Positions 471-63,081 are shown, counted from the first letter of the stretch. The stretch is 64,000 nt of DNA from Rebecca billardiae RCC1528 (GCA_965240325.2 OZ251227.1:248001-312000); one strand, 5' to 3'. Made by a program: numbers and translations. Notes: generated from the sequence alone by a model not told the origin.

Positions 471-623
471 CCGCCCGGTCGTTCGCGGCCGTCACAAGAA
501 CGAGTGTTCGCGAATGTCTCTGCTCACGCCCGCTGACCCGGACTGTGGTCGTGCTGTGGTGAGCAACCCCCGGACGCTTCGGGCTCGGCCGTCCATCGGT
601 CATCGGCGTTGCCGCGCGTCGCC

Positions 624-2342: not shown

Positions 2343-2371
2343 TGAGTCTGACGACACGTGTGTCAGACTCA
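2343..2371. other. Hairpin-forming inverted repeat between two convergent genes
   Basis: TGAGTCTGAC ... GTCAGACTCA 10-bp arms enclosing the palindrome ACACGTGT, about 25 bp past the stop at 2396. Confidence 0.5.
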
Positions 2372-2395
2372 TCAGATTGCCGCCATACGACTACG

Positions 2396-5300
2396 TCACT
2401 GCATGTCGCGGTACCACGAGTAGCGGTGGTACTGCATCGGCCCGTCGTTGCCCGCGAAGACGAGGAAGACGCAGTAGATCACGACCGCCACGAAGTAGAG
2501 CGAGTGCTTCAGGATGAGCACGTACGTGAGCGTGTGGTAGTTGAAGCCGTGCACCATCAGCTCGTCGCCCAGCTCGGAGCGCACGTGGAAGGGCACGCCG
2601 AGCACGTCGTACAGCTCGGTCACGTCGAGGTACTTGCCGTCCAGACGGTTCGCGCCGAGCTGGAGCTCCGCCGCGACGCCGCCGCCGCCCTCGGCCGGGC
2701 GCGCCGGCAGCTGCCCGACGCCGGCGTGGGCGGACACGAGCACGCCGCCGCCCTGCTGGTCCGCCCAGCCTACGCTCGAGTGCTTGCGGATGGCCGGCGA
2801 GCCCACGCGCGCGAGCGCTCCGCTGGTCGGCTGCGCCACGCGCCGCGAGCCCTCGCTCGCCGGCCGGATCGGCGAGTGCGCGCTGCCGCAGCTCGCGACG
2901 CGCGCGAGCGCGCACCCGCCGCGCCGCGCGCCGCAGCCGAGCGCCGGCACCGACGCGGCGGCGAGCAGCGGCGGCGGGCTGCCGCGCGCGGCGGCGGCGG
3001 CGGCGGCGGCGTGCGGCGCAGGCAGGGCGTGCGCCGCGGCCCCGCGGCCGCGCGGGCAGTTGCGCTCGACGGCGACGAGCGTGCCGCCGCGCTCGGGCGC
3101 GCCCGCCGCGGCGCCGCCGAGCGCGTGGTGCGGCGGCGGCAGCGGCGCGCGCACCGCGGCGCGCGGCGCCGGCGCACTCGGCGCGCTCGGCGCGCTCGGC
3201 GCGTGCGCGAGGGGCGGCAGCTGCGGCGCGCGCCCGCGCCGGCTGAGCGGCGAGCCGGCGGAGAGCACGCTGCTGCTGCTCACGCGCACGCTGAGCGGCG
3301 CGGGGAAAGGGCGCGGCGGCAGCGCGCGCGGCGGCGGCGAGGCGAGCGGCGGCGGCGGCGGCGGCAGCGGCGGCGGCGGCGCGGGCGGCGGCGGCGGCGG
3401 CGGCCGCGGCGGCGGCGGGCTGGGCGGCGGGATGGTCATTGCGACGAGCCCGCCCGCGGCCGCGGCCGCGAGCGACGCGCGGCGGCGCGGCGGCGCGCCC
3501 ACCAGCTCGACGAGCTCGAGCGCCTCCTGCTGCCCGCGCGAGCGCGCGCGCACGGCGGCGGTGCCATCGCCGCCGCTCACGCCCGCGCAGCTCGGCGTGC
3601 GCGGCGGCGAGGCGGACGAGGCGGAGGTGGAGCGCTCGGACGCGGCGGCGGGCCCGCCCGGCCGGCGCGAGAGCGCGCGCTCGGGTGAGGCGCCGCTGGG
3701 CGCGCGAACTGCCGCGGCCGCGCCCTGCGCCTCCTCGGGGTAGACGGTGCCGGCGCACGAGCGCCGGCGTCGCACGCGCCCCGCCGCCGCGTTGGCGATC
3801 TTGGTGAGCGCCGCGTTCCGCGCGCGCCGCCGCTTGCGCAGCTCGACGAGCAGGCGCGAGCGGCCGTAGATGGACGAGCGGCCTGCGAGCAGCGAGCGGA
3901 TCTGCGCGTCAAAGAGGATGAGGCCCAGCCTGTTGGTGAGCAGCTTGGCGGGGAGCACGACGGCGAAGGAGCGCCAGAGCGCGGGCACGTCGGAGAGGCC
4001 GATGGGCTGCGCGCCCGGGTGCACCGAGTACCGCCCGTAGAAGAAGACGAACATCATCGTCACGAACGGCGTGGCGATGGTTGCGATGATGTCCGCGAGC
4101 ACGTACTGCGCGCCCAGCCGCGCCGTGTACTGCAGCAGCAGCAGCGGGTCGTCGAGCGGCGAGGTCTCCCAGCCGAGGTACAGCGTCGCGCGGTACGCGA
4201 GCGCGGTGAAGACGCCGGTGTTGCGCATGAACGTCTGCACGCAGTTGAGCAGCAGCAGCCCCCAGAAGAGCAGGTCGAGCCGCGTGTCCACCTCCACAAA
4301 GAAGGAATAATAGAAGAGGGACTCGAACAGCTGGAACAGGAACACGTGCTGCGGGAACACGTTGCGCATCGTCATCGCCGCGTTGACCTGCTTGGCGAGG
4401 GCGAAGGTGCACACGTTCGCCGCGATCTGCAGGCTGGCGACCAGCAGCCGGAACAGCGCGGGCGTGTACCGGATGCCCAGCGGCAGCGCGAGCGAGTCGA
4501 AGAGCGAGGCGCACGCGAGGCCGCCGTCCTCGCCGCCGCACGCAAAGAAGAGCTCGCGCACCGCCGCGCCCGTCACCCACGGCAGCGGCAGCAGGCAGGT
4601 GACGTAGAAGATGGCGTACGAGAAGTTGAACGTGAGCGCGTCCCGCGCCTCGCGCAGCGTGTCGCAGCACAGCACCAGCAGCGCGGGCACGCCCGCGAGC
4701 AGCGCCACCGGGTAGAAGAGCCGGCCGTCCAGCCCGCGCAGGTACTCGACCCACGTCATGCCGCCCGCCACGCCGATCGCGAGGAGGGCGCACACGCCGA
4801 GCACCGAGCCGCGCGAGCTGCCCGGCGCGCCCGGCGGCGCGCCCTCGGCCTCCGCCCACGCGCCGCCGCCGCCGCCGCCCACGCCGCCGCCGCCGCCGCC
4901 CGGCTCGGGCGTGCGCGGCCGGCCGCGGGCGCGGCCGCGCGCGAGCGTTGCGCGCAGCCGGCGGCTCGGGCTGGGCGGCGGGCTCGCGCCGCGCGCCGCG
5001 CCGCCCGCCTCGGCGTCCGGCTCGGCGGCGCCGCCGCCCGCCCCGCGCTCCCGCGCGCGCGCCACCACCTTCCCCTTGTGCTTCAGCGCGTACAGCACCG
5101 CGGGCAGCAGCGCGGCCGTGCCCAGCACGAGAGCCGTGTTGCCCGAGAGGTACGCGAGACGCACGTCGCCCGTCAGGTAGAGCACGCCGAGCTCGAGCGT
5201 GGCGCCGCAGAGCGCGGGCACCGCGGCGAAGAGGAGGCGCCACTTCGGGTGGCGCAGCCGCGCCGAGTGCGTGTACGAGCGCGCCGAGCACGCCAGCATC

Positions 5301-6037
5301 GGCACCATCGCGCACACGTAAAAGGCCATGTGCCACACGACGACCGCCGGAGGCTGGAAGGAGCGCGGCGACGCAAACCCGAGGTACATCAGCGCGATGG
5401 GCACGAAGAGCGAGGCGACGATGATGCCGCCCAGCCGCGTGAGGTACTCGATCTGCTCCATCCACCACTGCGGGCTGCCGCGCGGCGCGCTCGGCGCGCG
5501 CACGCTCCGCCCGCCCGCCGCCTCGGCGCCGCCGTCCGTGTCCGAGCGCTGCAGCGGCGCGCGCGCGGGCGGCGCGGCCGCGCCGGCGGTGGGCGCGCCG
5601 GCCGTCGCGCCGCGCGGCGGGCCGCCGCACGCCGCGGAGCTCGCGCCGCCCTGTGCGCCGCCGATCGTGCCGCGCGACGACGCGGCGGCGAGCGGCGGGT
5701 GCGGCTGCGGCGCGGGCGCGTCGCGCCTGCGGCGCACGCGCGGCGCCGCCGACTGCGCGTCGGCGCGCGCGCCGCCGAGCGCGGGCACTGCGGGCGGCGG
5801 GATCAGCGGAAGCGCGCGCAGAAGCGCGTAGTCGATCGCGTTGAGCACGTCCGACAGGTCGAGGAAGCCCGAGAGGTCCTCGTCCGCCGCAGAGACCATC
5901 GTGTGCACCAGACCGCCGTCCGCGCGCAGGCGGAGCCGGCGCAGCAGCAGCGCGAACTGGTCGTAGTCGATGGTGGTCCCGCCGGACGCGAGCGCCTGGA
6001 ACTCGCGCGTCACCTCGACCGCGGACGCGGCGTCCAT
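2396..6037 (-). CDS. EF-hand-containing polytopic membrane protein of unknown function
   Basis: Long ORF. N-terminal EF-hand pair (GTTIDYDQF; DEDLSGFLDLSD), roughly 10 or more hydrophobic segments, Pro/Ala-rich loops, final TM SLYFVAVVIYCVFLVF. Confidence 0.8.
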   Translation of the reverse strand: MDAASAVEVTREFQALASGGTTIDYDQFALLLRRLRLRADGGLVHTMVSAADEDLSGFLDLSDVLNAIDYALLRALPLIPPPAVPALGGARADAQSAAPRVRRRRDAPAPQPHPPLAAASSRGTIGGAQGGASSAACGGPPRGATAGAPTAGAAAPPARAPLQRSDTDGGAEAAGGRSVRAPSAPRGSPQWWMEQIEYLTRLGGIIVASLFVPIALMYLGFASPRSFQPPAVVVWHMAFYVCAMVPMLACSARSYTHSARLRHPKWRLLFAAVPALCGATLELGVLYLTGDVRLAYLSGNTALVLGTAALLPAVLYALKHKGKVVARARERGAGGGAAEPDAEAGGAARGASPPPSPSRRLRATLARGRARGRPRTPEPGGGGGGVGGGGGGAWAEAEGAPPGAPGSSRGSVLGVCALLAIGVAGGMTWVEYLRGLDGRLFYPVALLAGVPALLVLCCDTLREARDALTFNFSYAIFYVTCLLPLPWVTGAAVRELFFACGGEDGGLACASLFDSLALPLGIRYTPALFRLLVASLQIAANVCTFALAKQVNAAMTMRNVFPQHVFLFQLFESLFYYSFFVEVDTRLDLLFWGLLLLNCVQTFMRNTGVFTALAYRATLYLGWETSPLDDPLLLLQYTARLGAQYVLADIIATIATPFVTMMFVFFYGRYSVHPGAQPIGLSDVPALWRSFAVVLPAKLLTNRLGLILFDAQIRSLLAGRSSIYGRSRLLVELRKRRRARNAALTKIANAAAGRVRRRRSCAGTVYPEEAQGAAAAVRAPSGASPERALSRRPGGPAAASERSTSASSASPPRTPSCAGVSGGDGTAAVRARSRGQQEALELVELVGAPPRRRASLAAAAAGGLVAMTIPPPSPPPPRPPPPPPPAPPPPLPPPPPPLASPPPRALPPRPFPAPLSVRVSSSSVLSAGSPLSRRGRAPQLPPLAHAPSAPSAPSAPAPRAAVRAPLPPPHHALGGAAAGAPERGGTLVAVERNCPRGRGAAAHALPAPHAAAAAAAARGSPPPLLAAASVPALGCGARRGGCALARVASCGSAHSPIRPASEGSRRVAQPTSGALARVGSPAIRKHSSVGWADQQGGGVLVSAHAGVGQLPARPAEGGGGVAAELQLGANRLDGKYLDVTELYDVLGVPFHVRSELGDELMVHGFNYHTLTYVLILKHSLYFVAVVIYCVFLVFAGNDGPMQYHRYSWYRDMQ

Positions 6038-46886: not shown

Positions 46887-47087
46887 GCTACCCGAGACGG
46901 GCCGAGTCCGAGACTCACGCCGAGAGACCGACTCCGAGAGTACTCGCGGAAATCGGTTGAGCTCCGAAGCGTCCCGCGCTCCGCGAGGCTACGGACCGAT
47001 CGGTTCGACCGCGAGGTCTCGCGCTAGCAGACAACGAGTTGGCTTGCTCACCGCGCAGTCATTTATAAGGCATGCGAAGGATCCGCA

Positions 47088-49555
47088 TCAGTGCATCTGC
47101 CGTTGATGCCACTCCCGTGCCGCCTGCGCGGCGACGTCGGCGTCGCCAGTGTCGGCGGCCGACACCTCGTCCGAGTCCTGCTCGCTCGGGACCGCCGGCG
47201 CCGCATCGGCTGCGCCGAGGCGCGCTTGGTGGTTTGCACCCGCGAAGCCAAGCGCGTCCAACGGCGCCTCCACCCCGCTGCCCCGCCCAGCCGGCGGCGG
47301 CTCGTGGAGGGTTTGCGAGCGGCGGCGCAGCGCGGCGAATGGCGAGCCCACGCTGCGACTGGGTGCGGTCTCTGCCGACGCGCGCCGGCCGCGGGTGGGC
47401 GGGGCCGCCGCGGGCTGCGCAGCTGCCGCCGCCTGCTGGTCGCGCGAGCGCCACCACTCGATCACCGCGATCGGCGCCGCGCGCGGCGACGGGCCGTGCT
47501 CCGCCACGCCGCGCACCGCCGCGGCCGCAAGCCGGCCGAGCTGCGTGGGCGGCAGCGCCAGCGAATCAGGCGCGCCCCCCGGCGGATGGCTCGTGCCGGC
47601 GCCGGAGTTGGCGTGCGTGGGCGTGAGGTGGTGCGCGGCGGCGGCGGGCACGCGCGCGGGCGCCTTGCCGCCGCGCGCCCAGCGCGCCTTCGCGCCCTCC
47701 GCCCCGCTCGCCCCGCTCGCCGAGGCCGGCGGCACGGCCGCGTCGGCAGCGAGCGCGGCGCCCGAGCCCGCGCGCTCTGCAGAGGTGGGCGGCGGCAGGC
47801 CGAGCGCGGCGGCCATCGGCGAGGAGGGCGCGGTGGAGAGGCGGACAGGGCGGCCGGTCGCCGACGCGAGGCGCGACGCCGGTGACGCGTGCACCGACTC
47901 GACGCTCCCCGCGCGCGAGTGGTACCCCAGCCCGTGCGCCGCCTCGCGCACCGCCCACGTGTACACCTTGCCGTCCGCGGTGAGCGCCACGCACGCGTCG
48001 CCCTCGACCAAGATCTGCACGACGCGCCCGGCGATGGGCACGCGGATGGGCGCGACTGCGCGGGCGGGGGAGGCGGCAGAGGAGGGCGACGGGGGGGTGA
48101 GCTCGCGCGCGCGCGCGTGCAGGGAGCGTAGAGCGCACGCCCCCGCCCCGGCGCGCGCGCGTGCGCCGGCGCGCCGCGTCTGCGCGCACCGCCGCCGCCC
48201 TCGAGGCTGTCCGCCGCCACGTCCTCGTCCAGCTCGGGCGTCGTGCGCGCGCTGCGGCGGCGGCGGCGGCCGCGGAGGGTGTCGGAGAGGTTCCAGCCCG
48301 ACTTGTCGATCGCGCGGCGGCCCGCATTCGAGCTCGCGCCCAGCATCACCGCGGCGAACCCGCCGGTGAGCATGCAGATCAGCAGCACCTGCCACCAGTG
48401 CGCAATGCCGTGCTGCTCGCCGTGGCGGCGCGGACGGCCCGCGCGCACGCCGCCGTCGGGGCCGCTGGCGTTGGCGCCGCCCGCGCGCGGGCTGTGTGCG
48501 CCGACGGCCGTGGGCCGCGCGCCCGCCCCCTCCGCCTCGTCCCCTTCGTCCGCATCCGCCGCGCCGTCCGCAGCGCCGGGCTGGTCGGCGGCGGAGGCGG
48601 GCGCCGAGGGCGAGGCCGCCGCGCCGTGCCTGTCGTCCTTGTGGTGGTGCTTGTGCTTGTCCGCGCCGTCAGCCGACGCGGCCGAGCCGTCCGACGGCTC
48701 CGTCTCGGCCTCGCCGTCCTCCTCCGCGCCCCCCTCCGCGCCCTTCTCCCCGCCCTCCGCCCGCGCGCCCTCCCCCTCCGCCGGCGGGGTGGGCGAGGGC
48801 CCGAACACAAAGTAGGTCACACCCGTGCGCTTGCCGCGGCCCTGGTACTCGCCGTACCCGTGCTCGAGGCAGGTGCCGCCGAGCTGGCCGCCGCGCCGTG
48901 TGAAGGGCCCCGTGAACGCGGAGGGCAGGCACACCATCTGGCACACGTTCTCCTCCTCGTTCATGTGGAACGCGTCCGAGAGCCGGTTGGACGGGCAGTG
49001 CACGTACGAGGGCCAACTGGCGGGGCCGCCCTTGTCCACCGCAGTCAGCACGTGCCCCTGGATCGTACCGTCGTCGTCGTCGTCGCCGTACGTGCTGTCC
49101 GTGCCGCCCGTCGACACGGACATATCCTCGTCCACCGGCCACATGCTCTCCACCCACGGCTCCGCCGTGTGGCTGAGCCACGACAGGAAGCGCATCTCGT
49201 CCGGCGTGACGGCGGCCGGCAGCGGAGCGAGCGGCGGACGGTCGCGATGGGGGATGAAGGCGAGGCCGACCAGGCCGACGATGAAGATGCACACGGCCGC
49301 GACCACGCGCCCACGGCGCCCCGCCACGGCGCGCCACTCCGGGCTCGGCTGCATCCGCTCGCGCCAGACGGCGACAACAGCCGCGCGCTGCGCGCCGCCC
49401 ATCGCGTGCTGCGCGACGGCACTCCATCCGCTGCGCAGGGCGGGGATGCTCATGCTGGGCGCGCCGAGCCAGCCTGGCGCGGCCGCGGGTGACCCCTGCG
49501 GCGGCGCCTGCTCTCCAAGCGCGTCCTCCATCGCCGCGGAAGGGGCGCACGCCAT
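47088..49555 (-). CDS. Two-TM protein with Cys-rich loop domain and one RCC1-like repeat; exons 49555-48190, 48055-47088
   Basis: TMs VCIFIVGLVGLAFI and WWQVLLICMLTGGFAAVML. Intron 48056-48189 joins to RVVQILVEGDACVALTADGKVYTW. Confidence 0.65.
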
Positions 49556-50151
49556 GCGAGCGGGGCTCGCGTTTGACGACGCGCGGCAGAGGCGGATGGT
49601 GAGCGCCGGGGCTGGGGCTGAGGGGCTCCAACTGATGCAAACTACTTGATGTGCGTGCCCTCTTTCCGTACGATGCCCTCATTCGTCACCCGGGAGATGG
49701 TGATTTTGATGCTCCGGCGAGGCGCGGCGCGGGCGGCGGGTCCCCCGCCAGCGCCAGGCCAGGGCGGCGGTTGGGCGTTTGTCTATCGTAGCAAAGGGGG
49801 AATCCTACCAGGATCTTAATTAAATCTTCCCGCGCGAGCCATGGCGCGTCGTAACAGGCTTACAATTGACTATTCATCCATTCCCGAAATTATAATGGCG
49901 TATGACCACGTACCCACCGAATTTCAAATGACCATATGACAATCATTATAGTAATCTGGGCGCGCCTATCTCGCCCTCGCCTATGGTAGTAACGAAAAAA
50001 ACCGGGCAGCATGCCAGCATGGCGGAATTGTCGTGAGTCGGCGGGCAATCTCAAGCTTGAAGTGGAAGTGAAAGCCCTGGCGAGCGCCCAAGATCACCCA
50101 TCTCGAGATCAGCGCGTCGCTCGTGGCCACGACGAACCCCGATCTCACTCA

Positions 50152-52476
50152 TCATTGGCCAGGGTTGGGGATCGGCGCGGCCGCGAGCGACGTCGAGAGC
50201 CACTCGATCGCCACCTCGAAGTTTTGGATGTGGTCGAGGATGGTGCCCGCGACGACGAGCAGGAACATCAGGCAGAACAGGCACAGGAGGCAGTTGATGT
50301 GCACCGTCGCGTTGATCTCCGACTGCGGCGCGGCGGGCACGACGGCGGTGGCGGCGGCATCGGTGAGCGCATCCGACGGGGCGGGTGAGGGCGCGCGATG
50401 GCAGCGTGCGCGAGCGCACAGCGCGCGCACGGCGCCTCAGCGCGCCGCGCGGCGCCGCGCGGCGCGCACCCAGAGCGAGCGGAACGCGACGAACACCATG
50501 TCCGCCGCCGGCGGCCTCTTGGGCTCGGGCAGCGTCGGGAACGCGTTCGGCGCGTCGCGCCCCACGCCGGACGGCCGCTCGGTCGCCACCTCCTTGGGCA
50601 GCACCTCGATCGTCATCAGAATCTTTGGGTTCTTCTTGCGCCGCCGCCGCTGGCGCTCGCGCGTCTTTCTGTCCTTCTTGACCACCTCGGGCGTGGGCTC
50701 GAGCTGGATCCAGCCCTTCGCGCCGCCCTCGACCGTGGTCGCCGCGTAGTGCAGCCCCTCCTTGTGCGTGATCATGTTGTCGCGGTGGCGGAAGGCCTGC
50801 GCGGCGGGGCGCGGTTGTGGTGGCGCGCGCGCGCGTGCGAGCGTCAGCGGCGCGGCGCGGCGCGCACCGGGCGCCGTCTCGCGCGGGCGGCGCAGCGGCA
50901 CGGCGCGCGCGTGCGCGCGTGCCTTGCGCATCAGGTGACGCAGCTTGAGCGCGCGGTACGCCAGCACCTCGCCGCCCGAGAGGAAGTCCCAGTCGCACAT
51001 CTGCAGCACACGTGTGCAGGCAGAGGTGCGCGCGGCGGCGCGGGGCAACCGTCAGGCCAAACGCGCACGGCGCGCGCGCGCGCGCGCGCGCGCGCGCTCG
51101 CTCGCTCGCGGGCTGCGCACCTGCAGCTGCAGGCGCACGCGCTTCGCGGGCAGCGCGAGCGAGAAGACGAAGCGCCAGTTGAACGCGCCGCGCCCGTTCC
51201 TGCAGAAGTAGTGCACGTCTGTCTCCTGCGACTGCTTCACAATGCCCTCCGCGCCCGACAGCATGCCGCGCACGTACAGGTCCGACTTCTGCGCCTGCGC
51301 GTCGGCCCACGGCGCGTACTTGGTCTCCCAGATGATCACGCGCAGCTCGTACTCCATCGTCGCGGGCGGCTTGGTGTTCACCGGCGGGAACGCCTTGAGC
51401 CTCGCGCGCGGGATGATGTCGACCCACAGCTCCGCGCGGCCCTGCACCGCACTCGAGACCGGGTTGAGGAGCGTGCGCCGCTCGACGGGCTTGAGCTCGA
51501 AGCCCTGCCACGCGCGCGAGCACCAGCGCTCCTCGAGGTCGATCACCGTCGAGCCGATGTAGTCGTCCGGCCCTGCGCGCGCGCGCGCGCACGCCGCGTC
51601 AGCACGCACGCCGCGGCCGCGCGCGCAGACGGAAAGTGCGCGCGCGCACGCGCGGCAAGCGCGCGCGCGGCCGCTCGCGCTGCGCGGTCTCGCACCGAGC
51701 AGGTCGTGGTCGTACACGTCCATGCGCAGCAGCGAGTGGCCGGGCATCTGCGTCTCCATCTCGAACGTCTCGTAGAACGACGCGTCCAGCGACGACTTGA
51801 CGTGCCTCGAGCGGTCCCCGTGCTTGGTCTGTCCGAGTGTGAGGATCACGTACGGGTCTGCGGTGCCCTGCACGTCCTGCGGCAGGATGCCGGAGATGCG
51901 CAGCAGGTACAGCCGGACGACGACGGGCTTGGGGTACTGGATGGTGCGCAGCCGGTCGAGCACGGCCTCGGTCTGCTTCGCGCCGCGCGCCTGGTAGTCC
52001 GCCTCGCTCACCACGCGCACCAGCGTCTTGAGCAGCCCGCACTCGCGCGTGATGCGCCCAGCAAACGCGTTGGCGCCGAGCACGCCGCGCGTGAGCACGA
52101 GGTTGTCGAACGTCTGCTCGCGCGCGGTGAACTCCTCCTCGTCCTTCTCGAGCTCCATGTCGAGGATGCGCCGGCCCTGCATGTACTTGGGCAGGAAGTC
52201 GCTCTCCTCGTCGTCCTCGTCGTCCTCCTCCGACGCGTTCGCGCCGCCGGCTCGGCCGCCCCACAGCGAGCCGCTCGTCCAGATCGGGTTGCGGCCGCGC
52301 GGCGCGCTCACCGGGCCCTGGTCGGGGCGCGCGGGCCGGATGATCGCCGGGTCGTCGAACTCGCGCCCGGGCGCGCCGTCGCCGGGGGTCTTGGCGAGGC
52401 GGCCGCCCTCCTGCGCGTCGAACGGGTTGAAGATCGACCCCGAGCGCGCGCGCATCCCCGGCCGCACGGGCTTGGT

Positions 52477-52517
<41 letters not shown>

Positions 52518-55500
52518 GCACGTTGGCACCAAAGCTCACGCGCGAGGTGGCGCGGATGGGCGGCGAGACGAAGGCGGGGGGCGGGGGCAGCGCGTCCGCG
52601 GCGGCCGAGTCCTCGCTCAGCCCGTCGATCAGCTCGTCCGACTGGTTGAGCGACTGCTGCGAGTCCGAGCGCCGCATCGTGCCGCGCTCAGCGATGGTCA
52701 CGCTGTTGGGGCGGCGCGAGGGACCGCCGACCAGCCTGCGCGCGGCCACGTGCATCGGGTCCTCGGTGCCGCGCAGCTCGCGGACCTCCTCGATCCGGAT
52801 GAGCCGCGCGGGGTCGGCGGTGCTCGCGGTGGGCACGAGGTCCTTCACGAGGCTCGCGTCCTGCTTCACGTCGCGCAGGTGCACCCGGTCGCCGATCTGC
52901 GCGCGGGCGCGCGCGGGCGGCGAGGCGGGGCGAGCCGAGCCGAGGCGCGCGCTCAGCAGGGGGCTCGGGCGGCGGGCGCGCGCGCGAGGCGGGCGCGGCG
53001 CGCGCGCACGTGGATCGTGTAGATCTGCGAGGCGAGCAGCGGGTTGCGCCGCAGCGCCTGCATGCGCAGGTCGTACACGCGCGTCGTGTCGCCGATGCGC
53101 CATGCGCGCCGGCCGCCCGCCGCGCCGCCCTGCGCGGGCTCGCTGTTGATCAGCTCGAGCGCGGCGTCGAGCTGCTCGACCCACAGGTCGGCGGCGGCGA
53201 GCCCCGTCGGCTTCCCCGCGTGCGCCTGCGCCGCCTCCACCCACGGCAGCTTGCCCGACAGCTCGAGCGCCGACTGGCCGATCTGCGTGCCCACCAGCCC
53301 GCCCAGGTGAGGGTCTATCAGCCGCGCCGAGAGCGCGGGCGCGAGGTGCAGCCCCGAGGGGAACTTCTCGCGCATGCGGATGACCTCGAGGTAGTTGGGC
53401 GAGGCGGCGCTGGGCACCTTGGACGGCGTCGTGCGCACGAGCGAGCGGTAGTCGCCGCCCGCGCCCAGGTCGAACGTCGAGTAGGGCGACGAGAGCCGGC
53501 CGGCGACCCGAGGCTCGAGCCCTCGGCCGCCGACCGCGATCACCTCCACGATGCACGGCTCGCCGCGGAGCTCGATGCTCTTGCGCGGGCCGATCTGGTA
53601 GCCGGGCGAGAGCGGCACGAGGGTGAGCGAGCACACGAGCGTCGCCTTCAGGTCGCCCGGCGTGCCGAAGTGGATGTCCACCTCCTTGATCTCCTCGTCC
53701 GCGAGCGAGCGCGGCAGGCTCGCGAGCTCGATCGCCGCGCGCCCGACGCGCTCGTCGCGCGAGATCGCGTCGTGGTCCCAGAGGAAGAGGAGGACGAGCG
53801 GGCCGAGGTGGATGTTGTCGCGCGGCAGGCTCAGCTGCATCGAGTACTGCGTGTACCACTTCGGGTACGACGTCTGCTTCTTCAGCTCCGTCTTGAGCGA
53901 GCGGCCGCCGCAGTGCAGCCGCACGTACGGGTCGAGCGAGCCCGTCTCGTCCGCCGCCGGCAGGTTGCGCCCGAGGTAGAGGCGGAAGACGAGCTCGAAG
54001 GGGAGCGGGTTGGCGAAGAGCGGCGCGAGGTTCTCGGCGAACGGCAGCTCCGCCGTCTCGCGCGCGCGGCGCAGCAGCACGCCGAGCAGCAGGTACCCCG
54101 CCGCGCCCTCGCCCGCGCCGCTGAACGCGCCAAAGCCCTGCGTCTCGCGCAGCGCCGTCCACTTGGGCGCCTCCCACGGCTTGTCGGTGAGCTGCAGCAG
54201 GTCGACGGCGGCGTAGCGCAGGTACGCGACGCGCACGGGGCGGCCGCCCGTGCGCGTGAGCGACTGCACCAGGTACACGAACACGTCGGGCAGCTGGCGC
54301 GGGTCGTCGGGCAGCCGGCGCTTCTCCTCGCGCGCCAGCTTGAACGAGTACTCGCCCGACGGCGAGACGCGCGTGCCAAAGTTGAAGCGCGCGCCGCCGA
54401 ACTCGACCTCGATGGAGAGCGGGCCGCCGGGGAGGTACGCGCCGGCGAAGAGCCACACGCGCAGCACGTACTCGTCCTCCGGCGGCGAGACCAGCTTGTC
54501 CGCGCGGAACGGGTCGTTGCGGATCGTGCGCGGCACGCGGTTCGCCTCGATCTTGGTGTTGCCGAGGAAGTCCACGACGCGCTTCGGCTGCATGTCCTGC
54601 AGCCGGCCGAGGGGGAGCTCGAAGGACTGCGCGACGGGCTGCGCCGCCTCCTTCGCCCACACCGTGAGCAGCACGCGCCCGCGGAACGCGATCCCCGCCG
54701 CCTTGCCCGTGTTCATGCGGTACGCGGCGCGGCCGCGCAGCAGCGGCGGCGCGCCGTAAAAGTAGTACCAGCGCGCGACCGTGCCCCTCGGCGGGTGGCC
54801 CTCCTCGGCGTCGTCGTCCTCGACGGTCTGCTTGACGATCTCGTCGAACGGGATCAGCACCGCCCCGATCGGCTCGCGCCCGAGCACGTCGCCGTCCCAC
54901 AGCATCACCGTCACGTGCGCCGAGTTGGCGGGCACGACGTACGGCAGCTCGAGCTGCTGCTCCCACACCGGTGCGCGCGCGCGCGAGATGAGCGAGGTGC
55001 GCACGGACTCGCGGCCGTGCGAGATCTCGACGTACGGGTCGATCGAGCCGAAGAGGTCCAGCTTGGGCAGCCCCGCCGCGCGGTGCACGCGCACGAGCAC
55101 GAGGTGCGACTTGCGCCGCACGGCCGGCGTGACGATCAGCTCGTCGTCCGACAGCTCGTCGTCGTTGTGCGACGGCGCGCTGTGCCGGCCGAACTGGACG
55201 GAGACGGAGAGGCGGACCTTCGCGTGCACGACCGCTGTGCCCGGCCGCTCGAGCCCGAACCAGCGCCGGTGCAGCTCGCGGTTCTTCTGCGCCGCGAACC
55301 ACGCGACGGGCGCGGAGAAGGCGCCCACCACGTTGCGCCGCAGCCCCGCAAAGCCGGTCGAGTCCCACAGCGTGATGGTGAGCGTCATGTCGCTTGCGGC
55401 GATGTCGCTCTCGACCTCGTTCTCGATGTGGAACCGCTCGTCGTACACGCAGTACTCCACCTTGTGCAGCGTGCGCGTCGCGCGCTTGTCGCCATCCACG

Positions 55501-57677: not shown

Positions 57678-60600
57678 TCAGACGAGCTCAACGCCGTTCC
57701 GCCGGCAGCACAGATCGCAAGCGCCCGTGCCCCTGCGCGACGGCGGCGAGGCCGAGCCGCCGCCGACGAGTGGCGTGCGCAGGCTCGAGCTGCCCAGCCC
57801 GAGCGCCTCGCTGATCCGCACGCGCTGCGCTCGCTCGCCCTCCAGCGGCGAGTCGAAGAGCTGCTCCCAGTCGACCGGCGCCTTGCGCGTGCACGCGCAG
57901 CAGAAGATGAGCACGTTCACGCACGGCCCGTGGTCGAAGGGCGAGCGCCCGTTCGGCGGCAGGTCCTTGAGGTAGTCGATCCGCTGCTTGGAGAGCGACT
58001 CAAACGTGGTGCGGTTGAAGAGCGCGAACGACGAGTGCGTGTACAGCAGCCCGAGGGTGAGGAGCGCGAAGAGCGGGCACATCACGAGCGCGGGCACGAG
58101 CGCCTGCTTGAAGTCCGACGCCACGCCGCCGATGAACTCGGCGGCGGTGAACGTCGTCGTCCACATGTTCAGCGTGAACTCGAAGAGCAGGTACCACCAG
58201 AAGAGGCCGTGGTTGCGCTCGCCCACGCAGTTTGCGACCCTGCACGCACACGGCGGGGCGCGCGCGCGCCACGCGCACGTCACGCAGGCCCGCCCATGCG
58301 CCGCGCCGGCCGCGCGCGCGCGGCGGCGCGCACCAAGGGCAGTGGTGGTCCATCTTGCGCACGCACTTGCGGCACGTCTTGCAGTGCTTCGCGCGCAGCG
58401 GCAGCTGCGCGGCGCGGCGCGCGCGCGGGAGCGGTCGGCGCGCGGGGCCGAGCGCGCGGTCAGCTCGGCGCCGCGCGCGGAATGGAAGGAGAGGGTGGGG
58501 GGCGCGTGCCGCTGGGCGTTTGTGGCTCGGGCGGCGTGCCCACCTCGGCCTCGCAGTACTTGCACATGCGCCGGTACGCCAGCGCCTCGAACTCGCCCTC
58601 TGCGACGCCGTCCGCGTGCGCGCCCGCCGCGCTCGCGAGCGGGGGCGTGCGCGCGCCCTCAGACGCCGGCGCGCCGCCGCACCCGTCCGCCGCCGCCGCC
58701 TGCTCGACCGGCGCACCGCCCTCGGCCTGGAGCAACGACTTTGGGCGGCGCCACACGCTGGCGGGCGAGAGGTTGCTGAGGAAGAGGCTTCGGCGGTTGG
58801 CTGGCGCGGCGTCGCTGTGCGACGCGGGCGAGTACGAGCCCTCGCGCGCCGTCGCGAGCGAGCAGGACGCGCTCTCCAGCCCGTCCGAGCGCGGCGGCGA
58901 CGCGCCCGGCTGGGGCGCGCCCGGCTGTGGCGCGGCGGCCACGCCGCCCGCATCGGCGGCGGCGCCGACCGAGCGATGCGTCCTGGGCGGCGAGCTGAGC
59001 GCGGACGAGCGCGAGGCGCGCGCGATCCCTGCCGACACCGCCGACACGACCAGCTCCACGGGGATCTCGATCGAGCGCTGCGCCAGATACTCCACCGTGG
59101 GCGAGCTCGAGCGCAGCTGGCCGCCGTTGGAGGCCGCGCCCGCGCCGGCCGGCGGCGCGGGCGCGGGCGGGCCGGCGAGCGGCGGCTCGGCGCCGAGCTC
59201 GGCGTCGGAGAGCGGGCGGCCGAGCCCGGCGCCGCCCGCCGCCGCGCTCGTCGCCGACACGCTGCGCTGCTCCCGCTCGAGCGCCAGCGGCGCGAGCGGC
59301 GCGACCTGCGGCGTGCGTGCGCCGCCGGGCGGCGCTGAGCCGAGCGCGAGGATGTCGGCTGCGAGCGCGCCCACCGCCTGCTCCGAGCCGTACCCACCGG
59401 ACCCACCGGACTCGTCCGGCCCGCTGGCGTGCGCGGCGCGCACCTCGCCGAGCTGCGAGAGATCGGAGCGGGTGGTCGCGGACGAGGCCGTCTCCTCCTC
59501 GCCGCCGACGCGCCGGCGCGCGGCCGCGGGCAGCGGCAGCGCGGCGGGGAAGCCCTGCGGCGCGGGCGCGGCGCGCTCGGCCGCGGCCGCGCCGACCGCG
59601 CCGCGCGCGGCCGCGGACGAGGTCGAGCCGCTCGACTCGGTGCGCTGGCGCACCGCCGCCGCCACGGCGACGGGCGCGTGCACCACGGTGGCGACCGCCG
59701 TGGCGACCGCGGTGGCCACCGCGTTGACGGGCGCCACCGACGCCGCGTCCGCTTTCGCGGGCGCGTGCGCAGCGGCAGCGCCCGCGGCGGCGCCGGTCGG
59801 CTCGTCGGCCGCGCCCGGCCGCGCGCGCGCGCCCTCGGCGCCCGGCGCGCCGGCGGGCGCGTGCGCGCAGCCCCCAGCGCCGCCGATGCCCTCGCCGTGC
59901 GTCACGTACCCCGGGTCGGAGTACGTGAGCCACGTGTACAGCAGCAGCACGACCAGCACCAGCCCCCAGTAGCACAGGAAGATGGCCGCGCAGCGGGAGC
60001 GGTGCAGGATCGCGTCGCGCAGCCCCTCGGCGGGCGGCACGATCGGCAGGTGCAGGCAGCCCTTCCTCCACTGCGTGGCGCGCGTGGCGGTGCGCGCGTA
60101 CGCGAAGAGCGAGCCGAGCGCGAGGATGTGCAGGAAGAGCCAGCCGACGCGCGCGCCCTGCGCCTCGAGCTGCTGCCGCGTGCACGAGCAGCACCGCATG
60201 CCGCGCGCCGCGCCGCACGCGCGCGCGAGCGCGGCGAGGGGCGTGGCCATCTCGTGCCACTCGGTGGCGCGCGGCAGGCCGACCGCGCCGCCGGAGCCGA
60301 GGCGCGCGCCGGCGCGCAGCAGCGGCTCGACCGCCTCGGGCGCGGCCAGGTGCAGCGCCGTCTGCCCGCCCGCGTCGCGCGTGTGCACGTCCGCCCGCTC
60401 GCGCACGAGCAGCTGCACCATGCGCGCGTGCCCGGCCGCGGCCGCAAACATGAGCACACTCGTGCCGGAGGGCGCGCGCCCGTTCGGGTCGGCGTTGTGC
60501 CGGAGGAGGAGGGCGGCGAGGTCGGTGTTGCCGCAGTCGGCGGCGACGGAGAGCGCCGTGCCGCCCCACGGCGTCTGCGCGCGCACGTTCGCCCGCGCGC

Positions 60601-61639
60601 CGATCAGCCGCCGCGCCACGTCCGCGTGGCCGCCCCACACGGCCAGCCTCAGCATCGTCTCACCGTCCGGCGCGGGCGAGTCGACCGCCGCGCCCGCCGC
60701 GATCCGCCGCGCGACGCGGTCGATGTCGACGGGGGCGCCGTCGGTGCCGGCGCGCAGGATGGCGAAGAGCGAGCTGGTCGCGTGCTGCCGCGCCGGGGCC
60801 AGCGGCGAGCGCCGCCCGCTCGACATCCTGCGCGCCGCCGGCGCCGCGCCGCGCTGCGCGCCGCCGCCCGCGTCCGCCGCGCCGCCGCCGCCTGAGCCGG
60901 TGCGCGAGGCGGAGGAGGAGAGCGCGGCGGCGGCGGCGGCGGCGGCGGCGTACGCGCGCGCGCCGCGGCTCGGCCTCGTCGCGACGGCCGCCTCGCGCCC
61001 TTTCGGCCACGCCGCGCCCGGCGCCGATCCGCCGCACGCCGCGGCGGCCGCGGCGTCCGCCGCGCCGAGCTGTGAGTCGAGCAGCGCCACCGCCTCCTCC
61101 ACGAGCACGTGCACGGGCGCCTCGGCGTTGAGCCGCGAGATGGTGGTGTCGGTGTGGAGCGAGGCGGTGTTCGCGATGTACCGCGGCCAGATCAGGCTCT
61201 TCCACACCGAGTCGAGCGTGGGCAGGTCGACGCCGTCGCCGCCGCGCGCGTGCCGCCTGCGCAGCGCGGTGCGCGAGGAGACCTCAAGCAGCAGCCGCAC
61301 GTCGAAGAGGTCGGCGATGGGCGAGGGGCGGTGGAAGAGCAGGAAGCCCTCGATGATGATGAGCGGGTCCGACGAGCTCTCCAGCGCCTCCCGCACGGCG
61401 CGCGCGAGCGCCTCGTAGTCGATGGCGTCGGGCGATTCCCAGCTCGGATCGAAGCGGCCTGTGTGCCACGCCTTGTCGCGGTAGAAGTTGTCGAGACGGA
61501 GCACGTCGGTCGCGCCGCAGCCGTAGCGGATGTGCAACTGCGATGCCAGCGTCGACTTGCCCGCCCCCGATACGCCGGCGATGCCCACGACGCGGGGCTG
61601 GCCCGAGCGCGAGCGCCTCACGCCCCCGAGGGAGGCCAT
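57678..61639 (-). CDS. NRK/uridine-kinase-like domain + ankyrin repeats + DHHC palmitoyltransferase; exons 61639-58544, 58404-58334, 58239-57678
   Basis: VVGIAGVSGAGKST, LDNFY, IIEGFLLF, IWPRY; about 4 ankyrin repeats (GETML, GGTAL, GTSVL, GQTALH); TMs with YSDPGY; spliced CKYC..LPLRAKHC..C..CV..MDHHCPWVANCVGERNH; NRTTFE. Confidence 0.88.
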
Positions 61640-61815
61640 GCGCCCGCCGCGTCGTTCGTGCCAATCTACAATCACGGCCACGCGCGCGCCGGGGTCAGTA
61701 ATCGCCTCGTACGGTACAAGACGAGCGCGATTCCGGCATGCAGGATCAGCCGAATAGACAGTCTCGACTCTCGTCGGCAAAGTGTCAAGGTCTGGAGTGG
61801 TTGCGCCGGGCCGCG

Positions 61816-63081
61816 ATGTCGGCGGCCCTAGGGATCGCTCGCAGCGCGCGCACGCGAGCCATCGGCAAGCTCGAACGCGCGTTGGAAGAGGGCAACGCTC
61901 ATATCGAGGAGTACGCTCGGTCATATCTGCGCACGATCGCCGCCCACATCGAGCTCGAGGCGCATCACCTCTCGCGCGGCGTGCTTGCGGAGTACCGGCA
62001 GCGTGTGAACTCGCTCGCCTTCAACATCGCGCGCAACAAGCAGCTGCAGGCGTCCCTCTGCCGGCGAGACGTAGGGGCCGCCGAGCTGTGCGCGATGCGT
62101 GCGGCCGATCTCGCGACGCCTGAAGAGCGTGCCGAGCGGGAGCGCTTGGCGCGCGAGAGCCTGCGCGCGAGCACGCGCAACGCTTGGAGTGAGATGCCGC
62201 GCACGCGCCACCATCCCTGCCCGCGGTGCAGCTCCCGGAACGCGGTGGCGTACGAGCACGTGAGCGCGGTGCGCGACATCCGCAAGGCGGAGACGTGGGG
62301 CGGGGGCAGCGCGACCGAGACGGAGCACGCCATCCGCTTCAACTGCGGCGGCTGCGGCCACGAGTGGCAGTCGGATCGGATTGAGATGGACGATGCCGAC
62401 ACCGATGCCGAGGGCGAGGCAGCAGGGGGCGTTGAGCGCGAGCATCAGCCCGACGGCGGGCGGGCGCTCGGTGACTCTGGCGCCGGGCCGAGCGGTGGCG
62501 CGCGCGCTGGTGCCGACACCGGCTCGGCCGCGCCGCCGGGCGCTGGGCGCGCAGCCTCGCAGCAGGTGGCCCACCTCGAGGCCGCGCTGCTGCAGGGGCT
62601 GGGCGAGCACGGGCGGCGAGGCGCGCACGGTGGACCGCTCTCGGCGGAGAAGGCCGGGGCACTCGCGCGCGCCATCGTGAGCCACATGCCCGCGGACGCC
62701 CGCCGAGCAGCACGCGTGCGCGCCATCGCCGCCAACGCGCGCCGCTCGCCCGCGCTGGCCGACGCCCTCGCGAGCGGGACGCTCTCTGTGCCCGAGCTGT
62801 GCGAGATGGACGACCTGCGCTCGCTGCTGCCGGAGTCGGAGCGCGCCGCGCAGGACGCCGCGCGCGAGGCGGCCAAGCGCAGGGTGACGCTCGACCCCAC
62901 GGCCGAGGCGGACGGTATGACGGACGAGCACGTGTGCAGCAAGTGCGGCGCGCGCAGCGCTGCTTACGCGCGCAGGCGTGTGGGCAACGTGCTCGCGTGG
63001 AAGGCGCAGGCTGCGGGCTCGTCGGCGGAGCGCGTCGTGCTCACCTGCCGGGGCTGCGGTCACGAGTGGCGTGCGGAGTAA
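61816..63081 (+). CDS. Tandem double TFIIS-like (central helical domain + Zn ribbon) protein
   Basis: YRQRVNSLAFNIARN..L...LCAM...DLA, CPRC...CGGCGHEW; second unit RVRAIAANARR..LCEM..., CSKC...CRGCGHEW. Confidence 0.85.
   Translation: MSAALGIARSARTRAIGKLERALEEGNAHIEEYARSYLRTIAAHIELEAHHLSRGVLAEYRQRVNSLAFNIARNKQLQASLCRRDVGAAELCAMRAADLATPEERAERERLARESLRASTRNAWSEMPRTRHHPCPRCSSRNAVAYEHVSAVRDIRKAETWGGGSATETEHAIRFNCGGCGHEWQSDRIEMDDADTDAEGEAAGGVEREHQPDGGRALGDSGAGPSGGARAGADTGSAAPPGAGRAASQQVAHLEAALLQGLGEHGRRGAHGGPLSAEKAGALARAIVSHMPADARRAARVRAIAANARRSPALADALASGTLSVPELCEMDDLRSLLPESERAAQDAAREAAKRRVTLDPTAEADGMTDEHVCSKCGARSAAYARRRVGNVLAWKAQAAGSSAERVVLTCRGCGHEWRAE

What the first reader, a model, noticed from the sequence alone, without database searches (positions are those of the whole stretch)
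57678..61639. Nucleoside (NRK-like) kinase fused to an ankyrin-DHHC palmitoyltransferase
Seen: the kinase domain, an Ala/Gly linker, the ankyrins and the first two TMs lie in one stop-free exon. A roughly 450-aa low-complexity insert precedes an intact DHHC-CRD. Known: Akr1/ZDHHC17/TIP1 are ANK-DHHC without a kinase, and EGFLL plus WPxY are nicotinamide riboside kinase features. Inference: protein S-acylation physically coupled to NAD+ salvage or nucleotide sensing. This fold also includes pantothenate kinase, which would link to CoA supply. I know of no described example.
Basis: partly seen in the sequence, partly recalled or inferred. Interest (0 to 1): 0.75.

Follow-up and report, generated by a model that had tools for sequence, protein, structure and literature searches.

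The report
Nucleoside kinase fused to DHHC palmitoyltransferase
A GC-rich haptophyte alga carries one gene that joins a vitamin-B3-type (nicotinamide riboside-like) nucleoside kinase, ankyrin repeats and a membrane protein-palmitoylating enzyme, a combination found so far only in this algal group and not described in the literature searched.

Summary
Observation confirmed. On the minus strand (61639 to 57678) a three-exon gene with two short GT-AG introns (58543-58405, 58333-58240) encodes about 1,240 aa. In order it has: an NRK1/uridine-kinase-type P-loop nucleoside kinase with all family-invariant residues, a 77-aa Ala/Gly linker, 4-5 ankyrin repeats, TM1-TM2-DPG, a 448-aa low-complexity insertion, and an intact DHHC-CRD with TM3-TM4 and TTxE.

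The stop-free linker alone proves nothing: 78% of shuffles are stop-free. Three other lines support a real fusion:
- Third-position GC in the linker (0.96) equals that of the flanking domains (0.97) and exceeds that of the introns (0.83-0.87).
- The linker shows no GC dip like the gene's true flanks (0.58-0.64).
- An independent NCBI/JGI gene model from Pavlovales sp. CCMP2436 (T492DRAFT_78204) joins the orthologous kinase (62% identity) and ankyrin (67%) domains.

No other kinase-DHHC fusion turned up in the protein searches or the literature. A family profile matches human NRK1 (E 7e-48) better than uridine kinases (6e-34) or pantothenate kinase (3e-8). The substrate is untested.

Coupling of S-acylation to NAD+ salvage remains inference, though mammalian zDHHC17 is the leading candidate enzyme for palmitoylating NMNAT2. 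This is a new variant of a known kind. Transcript evidence is still missing.

The parts
61637..61639 (-). Probable start codon (ATG) of the fused gene
   Evidence: Third-position GC rises to 0.93 or more from here and is 0.5-0.8 upstream. Orthologues P0151 and P0001 start two residues before the first beta strand.
61058..61639 (-). NRK/uridine-kinase-type P-loop nucleoside kinase domain (aa 1-194). P-loop at 61550-61576; catalytic Asp in LRLDNFY at 61481-61501; EGFLLF (catalytic Glu) at 61334-61360; Arg-rich lid at 61241-61261; WPRY at 61169-61192.
   Evidence: Pfam AAA_18 scores 30.7 bits, over its cut-off. Human NRK1 aligns over residues 11-157. The family profile hits NRK1 at E 7e-48. The AF2 model has pLDDT 90.5 and its top fold hit is NRK1 entry 2qt1.
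60827..61057 (-). 77-codon Ala/Gly/Ser-rich linker (43% Ala, 18% Gly) between kinase and ankyrin domains
   Evidence: GC3 is 0.961, with 3 A/T-ending codons of 77, against 0.972 in the confident domains. P is 0.0005-0.025 under non-coding GC of 0.83-0.89. The stretch has no A/T-rich element. Stand-alone relatives P0004 and P0006 end where this linker begins.
60809..60826 (-). Small conserved island in the linker containing an in-frame Met (MSSGRR). It could be a fossil or an alternative start of a kinase-less isoform.
   Evidence: It aligns with M-x-x-S-P-SGRR of the CCMP2436 orthologue, while the rest of the linker is unalignable.
60290..60781 (-). Ankyrin-repeat domain, 4-5 repeats of consensus type
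   Evidence: Pfam Ank_2, Ank_5 and Ank hits have E about 1e-17. The domain is 67% identical to P0151. Best PDB sequence matches are ankyrin-1/2 and DARPins.
60095..60148 (-). Predicted TM1
   Evidence: Mean Kyte-Doolittle hydropathy is 1.76.
59927..59989 (-). Predicted TM2
   Evidence: Kyte-Doolittle hydropathy is 2.24-2.49.
59909..59920 (-). SDPG (the DPG motif of DHHC enzymes, just after TM2)
   Evidence: Read from the translation. The motif definition is from general knowledge of the family.
58565..59908 (-). 448-aa low-complexity insertion in the cytosolic DPG-to-CRD loop. It includes an AVAT repeat at 59687-59722.
   Evidence: GC1/GC2/GC3 are 0.80/0.71/0.95 in frame. P is below 1e-6 against non-coding GC of 0.89. 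The stretch is stop-free in only 3% of shuffles.
58544..58564 (-). End of exon A: first Cys pair of the cysteine-rich domain (CKYCEAE)
   Evidence: The donor GAG|GTGGGC follows at 58543.
58405..58543 (-). Intron 1 (139 nt, GT..AG)
   Evidence: Left unspliced, the frame reaches a stop at 58460. Splicing restores the canonical C-x2-C-x9-HC spacing. GC is 0.83 with no consistent codon periodicity.
58334..58404 (-). Exon B: core of the CRD with the DHHC tetrapeptide. It ends in the split codon TG|G.
   Evidence: Pfam DHHC profile positions 15-39, E 3.5e-9. Translation.
58240..58333 (-). Intron 2 (94 nt, GT..AG)
   Evidence: The Pfam profile coordinates of exons B and C abut at position 39.
57681..58239 (-). 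Exon C: rest of the DHHC domain. TM3 at 58131-58205; TM4 at 58017-58103; TTFE at 57999-58010; PaCCT-like SPFDHG..N at 57915-57944; C-terminal tail.
   Evidence: Pfam DHHC profile positions 39-132, E 3.3e-8. GC3 is 0.96. Motifs and hydropathy.
57678..57680 (-). Stop codon (TGA), followed by a 3' flank of GC 0.58 with A/T-rich runs

Best explanation
One gene encodes one multidomain membrane protein of about 1,240 aa.

**Layout.** The cytosolic N-terminus carries a nucleoside kinase of the NRK1/uridine-kinase fold. Its P-loop, catalytic Asp and Glu, and Arg-rich lid are intact, so it is probably active. A flexible Ala/Gly tether links it to 4-5 ankyrin repeats. These lead into a four-helix DHHC S-acyltransferase with a complete catalytic cysteine-rich domain. 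That domain is separated from TM2 by a long disordered insertion.

**Inferred mechanism.**
- The DHHC part auto-acylates from acyl-CoA and transfers the acyl chain to cysteines of client proteins, which the ankyrin repeats may recruit.
- The fusion holds the kinase at the cytosolic face of the same membrane. There it phosphorylates a nucleoside, most likely of nicotinamide-riboside type; uridine is not excluded.
- The two activities are therefore co-localised. Whether one regulates the other is unknown.

**Origin.** The kinase-ankyrin junction is shared with another Pavlovophyceae alga, so the fusion predates the split of these two lineages.

**Shown versus inferred.** Shown: the domain content, the splice-compatible structure, the coding signature across the junctions, and the orthologous fused model. 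Inferred: a single transcript, both catalytic activities, topology, substrate, and any coupling.
For: 1. **Domains.** Pfam finds Ank, AAA_18 and DHHC. The kinase aligns end to end with human NRK1. A profile of the kinase and 47 relatives hits NRK1 at E 7e-48, Udk at 6e-34, UCK1/2 at 1e-29 to 6e-28 and PanK at 3e-8. The AF2 model has pLDDT 90.5, and its best fold hit is NRK1 with NR bound (TM-score 0.71/0.76).
2. **Catalytic residues.** All seven invariant columns of the 48-sequence family alignment are kept: G22, G27, K28, D50, E97, G98, R128. D50 and E97 align with NRK1 Asp36 and Glu98, which are essential (PMC1994991).
3. **Junction.** The linker has GC3 0.961, the confident domains 0.972, and the introns GC 0.83-0.87. 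Linker GC is 0.89, whereas the real 5' and 3' flanks of this gene have 0.64 and 0.58 with A/T-rich runs.
4. **Orthologue.** P0151 (Pavlovales sp. CCMP2436, T492DRAFT_78204, 498 aa) carries the kinase (62% identity) and ankyrin domain (67%) in one model, with a 57-aa linker of different sequence. That genome has only 55% GC (PMC9756366), so chance read-through is less likely there.
5. **DHHC half.** TM1, TM2 and DPG follow the ankyrin repeats in the same high-GC3 frame. The insert is coding-like (GC3 0.95, P below 1e-6). Two GT-AG introns restore a canonical CRD, and the Pfam profile coordinates abut.
6. **Copy number.** The kinase and this DHHC are each single-copy in the 72-Mb genome. Canonical PRK/uridine-kinase family genes lie elsewhere.
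Against:
- The linker's stop-free state is expected by chance (0.78).
- The linker's GC3 excess is only moderately significant if its own 0.89 GC is taken as the null (P 0.025).
- A Met followed by a conserved SGRR island sits just before the ankyrin domain in both species. It could mark an internal start.
- The CCMP2436 model derails after the ankyrin repeats, so it does not show that the DHHC half is attached there. It may also itself be an ab initio read-through.
- No full-length fused relative exists among database proteins of 568-1806 aa.
- TM1 and TM3 are only weakly hydrophobic. An Ala/Val/Thr repeat in the insert scores like a helix.
Confidence: 0.75

Rival explanations
1. There are two transcription units or isoforms. 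A stand-alone kinase gene and an ankyrin-DHHC gene lie head to tail on the same strand. The second starts at the conserved Met at 60826, from an internal promoter. The Ala/Gly 'linker' is a GC-rich spacer or UTR that merely happens to be open and in frame.
For: - A stop-free 231-nt stretch at 89% GC is expected in 78% of shuffles.
- This genome is compact: the divergent neighbour gene starts about 100-176 nt from this gene's ATG.
- A Met plus SGRR island is conserved in both species just upstream of the ankyrin domain.
- Stand-alone relatives of the kinase end exactly where the linker starts.
Against: - The kinase frame has no stop codon before 58460, so a separate kinase mRNA would need an unseen splice or would lack a stop.
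- Linker GC3 (0.961) equals that of the coding domains.
- Linker GC is 0.89, against 0.58-0.64 in the real flanks of this gene, and it has no A/T-rich element.
- The frame is preserved in a second species whose linker has a different length and sequence.
Confidence: 0.12
2. The fusion is real, but the kinase-fold domain is not a metabolic enzyme. It acts as a nucleoside or nucleotide sensor, or as a regulatory or client-docking module that gates the S-acyltransferase.
For: - The same genome is reported to hold another fusion of a metabolite-kinase fold with ankyrin repeats and an effector: ribokinase-like, ANK, protein kinase, CHAT (earlier notes s1-365422 and s1-338802; not tested here).
- The NRK1 specificity element Gln135-cisPro136 is not conserved (alignment; PMC1994991).
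- Identity to NRK1 is only about 23%.
Against: - Every family-invariant catalytic residue is retained: P-loop Lys, Asp50, Glu97 and the lid Arg. The eroded motifs reported for the ribokinase-like case are a contrast.
- This is the only NRK-type gene found in the genome, so NR kinase activity, if the alga has it, should reside here.
Confidence: 0.1
3. It is an artefact: an assembly chimera, or a decaying pseudogene whose open frames survive only because stop codons are rare in this GC-rich DNA.
For: - Long spurious ORFs are common here. All six frames carry ORFs of 180-680 aa over this locus.
- This is the most divergent DHHC of about 20 in the genome, at 32-39 Pfam bits per exon.
Against: - Exon A is stop-free in at most 0.0002 of shuffles.
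- GC3 is 0.95-0.99 in one single frame over 3.1 kb.
- All catalytic motifs of both enzymes are intact.
- The kinase-ankyrin junction recurs in an independent assembly of another species.
Confidence: 0.03

Closest known systems
Nicotinamide riboside kinases (human NMRK1/NRK1, NMRK2; yeast Nrk1)
   Same: - A P-loop metabolite kinase of about 200 aa.
- GxxxxGK[ST] P-loop; catalytic Asp (NRK1 Asp36) and Glu (Glu98, within EGFLLF); Arg-rich lid; WPxY motif.
- Best profile match (E 7e-48) and best fold match (2qt1).
   Different: - Only about 23% identical.
- The Gln135-cisPro136 element that excludes uridine in NRK1 is not conserved, so the substrate is open.
- Known NRKs are small soluble proteins. 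This one is the N-terminal domain of a polytopic membrane enzyme.
Ankyrin-repeat DHHC S-acyltransferases (yeast Akr1/Akr2, animal zDHHC17/HIP14 and zDHHC13, Arabidopsis PAT24/TIP1)
   Same: - N-terminal cytosolic ankyrin repeats followed by a DHHC-CRD membrane enzyme.
- DPG, DHHC and TTxE motifs are present.
- zDHHC17 is the leading candidate palmitoyltransferase for NMNAT2, the enzyme after NRK in NR salvage (PMC4239634). A link between an ankyrin-type DHHC enzyme and NAD+ salvage therefore has a precedent.
   Different: - 4-5 consensus-type repeats rather than 6-7.
- Four predicted TM helices rather than six.
- The ankyrin region is no closer to zDHHC17/Akr1 than to generic ankyrin proteins.
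- It has a 448-aa insertion between DPG and the CRD.
- It has an N-terminal kinase domain, which none of these carry.
Hypothetical protein T492DRAFT_78204 of Pavlovales sp. CCMP2436 (P0151)
   Same: Orthologous kinase (62% identity) and ankyrin domain (67%) joined in one gene model. It is the only fused relative found.
   Different: - The linker is 57 aa instead of 99 and is unalignable except for the SGRR island.
- The model ends in 110 non-homologous residues after the ankyrin repeats and has no TM or DHHC part.
- The downstream DNA could not be inspected.
NadR-type and other NAD-enzyme fusions of NR-kinase-like domains
   Same: An NRK-like P-loop domain fused to a second enzyme. Relatives of this kinase in the representative library are fused to NMNAT-type cytidylyltransferase-like domains (P0013, P0125) or to ADP-ribosylglycohydrolase (P0122).
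   Different: In those proteins the partner is a soluble NAD-metabolising enzyme. Here the partner is a membrane protein acyltransferase with no known role in NAD chemistry.

Membership tests
NRK (nicotinamide riboside kinase) family | P-loop GxxxxGK[ST] | tested here: met
   GVSGAGKST at aa 22-30. G22, G27 and K28 are invariant in the 48-sequence alignment.
NRK (nicotinamide riboside kinase) family | Essential carboxylates equivalent to NRK1 Asp36 and Glu98 | tested here: met
   D50 (in LRLDNFY) aligns with Asp36 and E97 (in EGFLLF) with Glu98. Their essentiality is from PMC1994991.
NRK (nicotinamide riboside kinase) family | Closer to NRK than to uridine-cytidine kinase, phosphoribulokinase or pantothenate kinase | tested here: met
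   The family profile gives NRK1 166 bits (E 7e-48), Udk 120 bits, UCK1/2 101-106 bits, PRK 69 bits and PanK 37 bits. Fold search gives NRK1 TM-score 0.71/0.76, UCK2 0.68/0.66 and PanK 0.59/0.41. With the single sequence the margin is small: NRK1 1.9e-6 over the full length, uridine kinase 6e-8 over the N-terminal part only.
NRK (nicotinamide riboside kinase) family | Base-specificity element of NRK1 (Gln135-cisPro136) and actual NR phosphorylation | tested here: inconclusive
   Gln-Pro is not conserved in the alignment; the aligned residues are Asp-Gly. NRK2 also lacks it and accepts uridine (PMC1994991). Enzyme activity cannot be tested with these tools.
DHHC-CRD protein S-acyltransferases (Pfam PF01529) | Pfam DHHC domain above the gathering score, with the DHHC tetrapeptide | tested here: met
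   Exon B scores 37.2 bits (profile 15-39) and exon C 34.1 bits (profile 39-132); the cut-off is 28.7. DHHC is read in exon B.
DHHC-CRD protein S-acyltransferases (Pfam PF01529) | Canonical zinc-binding Cys/His spacing: C-x2-C-x9-HC-x2-C-x2-C-x4-DHHC-x5-C-x4-N-x3-F | tested here: met
   Read exon by exon across both splice junctions, every position fits. The pattern itself is from general knowledge.
DHHC-CRD protein S-acyltransferases (Pfam PF01529) | Four or more TM helices with the CRD on the cytosolic loop between TM2 and TM3; DPG and TTxE motifs | tested here: inconclusive
   SDPG follows TM2 and TTFE follows TM4. TM2 and TM4 are strongly hydrophobic (KD 2.2-2.5). TM1 (1.76) and TM3 (0.85) are weaker. 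An AVAT repeat in the insert scores 1.8-2.0. No dedicated topology predictor was available.
Akr1/zDHHC17/zDHHC13/TIP1 ankyrin-DHHC subfamily | N-terminal ankyrin repeats on the same polypeptide as the DHHC domain | tested here: met
   The ankyrin repeats, TM1, TM2 and DPG lie in one ORF with continuous GC3 of 0.99.
Akr1/zDHHC17/zDHHC13/TIP1 ankyrin-DHHC subfamily | Six TM helices, and an ankyrin domain specifically related to that of zDHHC17/Akr1 (orthology) | tested here: not met
   Only four candidate TM helices were found. None of the best 120 proteins matching the ankyrin-TM region carries PF01529. The best 60 PDB matches are ankyrins and DARPins, not zDHHC17. It works like an ankyrin-DHHC enzyme but is not filed as an orthologue of that subfamily.

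The most novel reading that the evidence does not exclude
The fusion is a 'Rosetta stone' for a real functional coupling. The algal protein would form a membrane-anchored NAD+ salvage station. The tethered kinase would trap imported nicotinamide riboside as NMN at the same membrane where the DHHC domain S-acylates and anchors downstream NAD enzymes, as zDHHC17 appears to do for NMNAT2 in neurons. Alternatively, nucleoside or nucleotide binding by the kinase domain would gate S-acylation, tying protein lipidation to NAD or nucleotide status.
Probability: 0.15. Interest if true: 0.75.

Novelty: new variant of a known kind. Interest (0 to 1): 0.5.

Why it matters
DHHC S-acyltransferases are known with ankyrin, SH3 or PDZ-binding accessories. 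I found none with a small-molecule kinase domain, and NR kinases are known as small soluble enzymes.

A conserved fusion in Pavlovophyceae would be the first case of a nucleoside or NAD-precursor kinase built into the protein-lipidation machinery. Domain fusions often flag functional links. [quoted passage not shown] The algal gene therefore offers a simple, testable handle on whether NAD+ salvage and S-acylation are coupled at membranes more generally.

If the two halves merely share a polypeptide, it is still a clean example of how lineage-specific multidomain enzymes arise in GC-rich algal genomes. It is also a caution that stop-free frames mean little in such DNA.

Tried and rejected
1. 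**Word-index search for long proteins (568-1806 aa) sharing the kinase.** None found.
2. **Full HMMER search of 1.84 billion representatives with the kinase domain.** One close relative appeared, a 143-aa metagenome fragment at 66% identity. None of the 19 longer (359-3413 aa) multidomain hits scanned from the top 150 has ankyrin or DHHC domains.
4. **Two metagenome scans (kinase patterns, ankyrin patterns).** No orthologue; only generic ankyrin proteins at 37-40% identity.
5. **Search with the ankyrin-TM region.** It returned only generic ankyrin proteins such as tankyrases and ankyrins, and no DHHC protein.
6. **ESM Atlas look-alikes.** All scores were below 0.9, so uninformative.
7. **PDB sequence search with exon C alone.** No hit at E 0.01 or better.
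8. **AF2 of kinase + linker + ankyrin with a 3-sequence alignment.** Mean pLDDT was 47, so it is not usable. It only agrees that the linker is unstructured.
9. **Pantothenate-kinase or dephospho-CoA-kinase reading of the kinase domain.** Rejected: E 3e-8 against 7e-48 for NRK1.
10. **A large in-frame intron in place of the insert.** Rejected on codon periodicity: GC1/2/3 are 0.80/0.71/0.95.
11. **Paralogue origin.** The nearest DHHC in the genome is 36% identical and has no ankyrin repeats.

The joined spliced protein was not assembled, searched or folded. All searches were done exon by exon, by reference. Nothing here looked human.


Full report
**Anatomy**

The locus lies on the minus strand of a very GC-rich eukaryotic genome: 72 Mb in 41 contigs, with the window at contig 10, 248001-312000. 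The longest ORF (58460..61924, 1154 aa) carries Pfam ankyrin families (E about 1e-17) and a P-loop kinase. AAA_18 scores 30.7 bits, over its cut-off, and PRK scores below its cut-off.

Two shorter ORFs in other frames carry the two halves of the Pfam DHHC domain, at profile positions 15-39 and 39-132. Reading the DNA and translating exon by exon gives a three-exon model:
- Exon A, 61639-58544, 1032 aa.
- Intron 1, 58543-58405, 139 nt, GAG|GTGGGC...GCGCAG|C.
- Exon B, 58404-58334, ending in a split Trp codon.
- Intron 2, 58333-58240, 94 nt, TG|GTGCGC...GTGCAG|G.
- Exon C, 58239-57681.
- Stop at 57680-57678.

Across both junctions the cysteine-rich domain has the canonical spacing, including exactly nine residues between the first Cys pair and the His-Cys. 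The Pfam profile coordinates of exons B and C abut.

**Start codon**

The ORF is open up to 61924. However, third-position GC is 0.5-0.8 upstream of about 61650 and 0.93-1.00 downstream. The two closest relatives also begin just before the first beta strand.

**Kinase domain**

- With the single sequence, human NRK1 aligns over residues 11-157, including EGFLLF and WPxY (E 1.9e-6). Uridine kinases match mainly the P-loop half.
- A full HMMER search of 1.84 billion representatives gave 1212 relatives.
- An alignment of the domain with 47 of them keeps seven invariant columns: G22, G27, K28, D50, E97, G98, R128. All seven are present here.
- That profile hits NRK1 at E 7e-48 over its full length, Thermus uridine kinase at 6e-34, UCK1/2 at 1e-29 to 6e-28, phosphoribulokinase at 5e-18 and pantothenate kinase at 3e-8.
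- The AF2 model (pLDDT 90.5) is closest to NRK1 bound to NR (TM-score 0.71/0.76). UCK2 follows at 0.68/0.66 and PanK at 0.59/0.41.
- D50 and E97 correspond to NRK1 Asp36 and Glu98, which are essential in vivo and in vitro (PMC1994991).
- The Gln135-cisPro136 element that makes NRK1 reject uridine is not conserved. Substrate specificity therefore stays open.
- The genome has other, canonical PRK/uridine-kinase family genes but only this one NRK-type gene.
- Some relatives of the domain are fused to NMNAT-type or ADP-ribosylglycohydrolase domains. This fits an NAD-related family, but it is only a lead.

**DHHC half**

- After 4-5 consensus-type ankyrin repeats come a moderately hydrophobic helix, a strongly hydrophobic helix and SDPG.
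- A 448-aa Ala/Gly/Ser/Pro-rich insertion follows, then the CRD.
- Exon C adds two more hydrophobic segments, TTFE and a PaCCT-like SPFDHG..N motif.
- The insert is coding: GC1/2/3 are 0.80/0.71/0.95 in frame, with only 21 A/T-ending codons of 461 (P below 1e-6 even against 89% GC). It is stop-free in only 3% of shuffles.
- The ankyrin region is no closer to zDHHC17/Akr1 than to generic ankyrin proteins, and I count four TM helices, not six.
- I therefore treat the protein as working like an ankyrin-DHHC enzyme, not as an orthologue of that subfamily.
- The nearest DHHC paralogue in the genome is a plain DHHC at 36% identity.

**Is the kinase really fused?**

A 231-nt stretch of 89% GC is stop-free in 78% of shuffles, and all six frames here carry long spurious ORFs. 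Three independent observations do support the fusion.

1. **Coding signature.** The linker has 3 A/T-ending codons of 77 (GC3 0.961). This matches the confident domains (0.972) and exceeds the two introns (GC 0.83-0.87). P is 0.0005-0.007 against intron-like composition and 0.025 against the linker's own GC.
2. **Composition.** The real 5' and 3' flanks of this gene have GC 0.64 and 0.58 with A/T-rich runs, and the other gene boundaries nearby dip to 0.54-0.63. The linker stays at 0.89 with no A/T-rich element. A separate kinase mRNA would also have no stop codon before 58460.
3. **An orthologue.** The word-index search with kinase + linker + ankyrin found P0151, hypothetical protein T492DRAFT_78204 of Pavlovales sp. 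CCMP2436, at E 1.8e-120.
   - It carries the kinase (62% identity) and the ankyrin domain (67%) in one 498-aa model.
   - Its linker is 57 aa and shares only a short M..S.SGRR island with the window's linker.
   - That genome was annotated by the JGI pipeline, with transcriptome data generated alongside, and has 55% GC (PMC9756366). Chance read-through is less likely there.

Caveats remain. I cannot tell whether that particular model has transcript support. It also derails into non-homologous sequence right after the ankyrin repeats, so it says nothing about the DHHC half in that species.

Stand-alone relatives (P0004, P0006) end exactly where the linker starts. This marks the domain boundary and fits a fusion of a once-independent gene.

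**What could not be done**

Two metagenome scans gave no orthologous contig. There was no access to RNA data.

**Function and precedent**

Both catalytic centres look intact. With four TM helices the N-terminus, and so the kinase and the ankyrin repeats, would face the cytosol together with the DHHC loop. The simplest reading is a bifunctional, co-localised enzyme.

Literature searches found no kinase-DHHC fusion. They did recover a relevant precedent. NMNAT2, the enzyme after NRK in NR salvage, is anchored to Golgi membranes by palmitoylation, and the ankyrin-DHHC enzyme zDHHC17 is its leading candidate palmitoyltransferase (PMC9299865; PMC4239634).

**Verdict**

- The fused architecture is probable (about 0.75) and is shared at least in part within Pavlovophyceae.
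- The functional coupling is speculative.
- It is a new variant of known kinds, of moderate interest.

Noticed in passing
window 61037-60828 (minus strand): A donor-like GTGCGG at 61037 and an acceptor-like GCGCGCAG| ending at 60828, directly before the internal ATG, would define a 210-nt intron. Its length is a multiple of three, so kinase and ankyrin stay in frame whether it is spliced or retained. It rests on pattern only; the high GC3 argues that the stretch is translated.
   Followed up: partly
window 60809-60826 and P0151 residues about 212-222: Both species share a conserved island with a Met (M-S-S-G-R-R here, M-A-R-S-P-S-G-R-R in CCMP2436) inside an otherwise unalignable linker. It may be the fossil start codon of the pre-fusion ankyrin-DHHC gene, an alternative start, or a short functional motif.
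   Followed up: partly
window 61640-61815: Only about 100-176 nt (GC 0.64) separate this gene's ATG from the divergent + strand TFIIS-like ORF (61738/61816-63081). This is a very short shared 5' region, probably a bidirectional promoter.
   Followed up: no
proteins P0013, P0125, P0122 (representative library): Relatives of the kinase domain are fused to NMNAT-type cytidylyltransferase-like domains (P0013, P0125) or to an ADP-ribosylglycohydrolase (P0122). NAD-related fusions therefore recur in this kinase family.
   Followed up: partly
protein P0002 (3413 aa, representative library): This giant protein has 32 repeated stretches matching residues about 126-167 of the kinase (lid/WPxY region), and Pfam reports WcbI hits. 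The nature of the repeat is unexplained.
   Followed up: no
window 59687-59722: An AVAT tandem amino-acid repeat inside the insert scores like a hydrophobic helix (KD 1.8-2.0). If it spanned the membrane it would put the DHHC loop on the wrong side. It is probably just low complexity.
   Followed up: partly
window about 18000-47000: Most of this stretch lacks the strong third-position GC signature seen in the genes at 1-6000, 47000-55500 and 57700-61650. Other readers noted transposon-like elements there.
   Followed up: no
G000:C1:2305094-2305501 and G000:C1:2413194-2413601: Two DHHC loci on contig 1, about 108 kb apart on opposite strands, have identical Pfam scores (133.2 bits). This suggests a recent inverted duplication. 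C10:1149501 and C11:1961824 also have identical scores.
   Followed up: no
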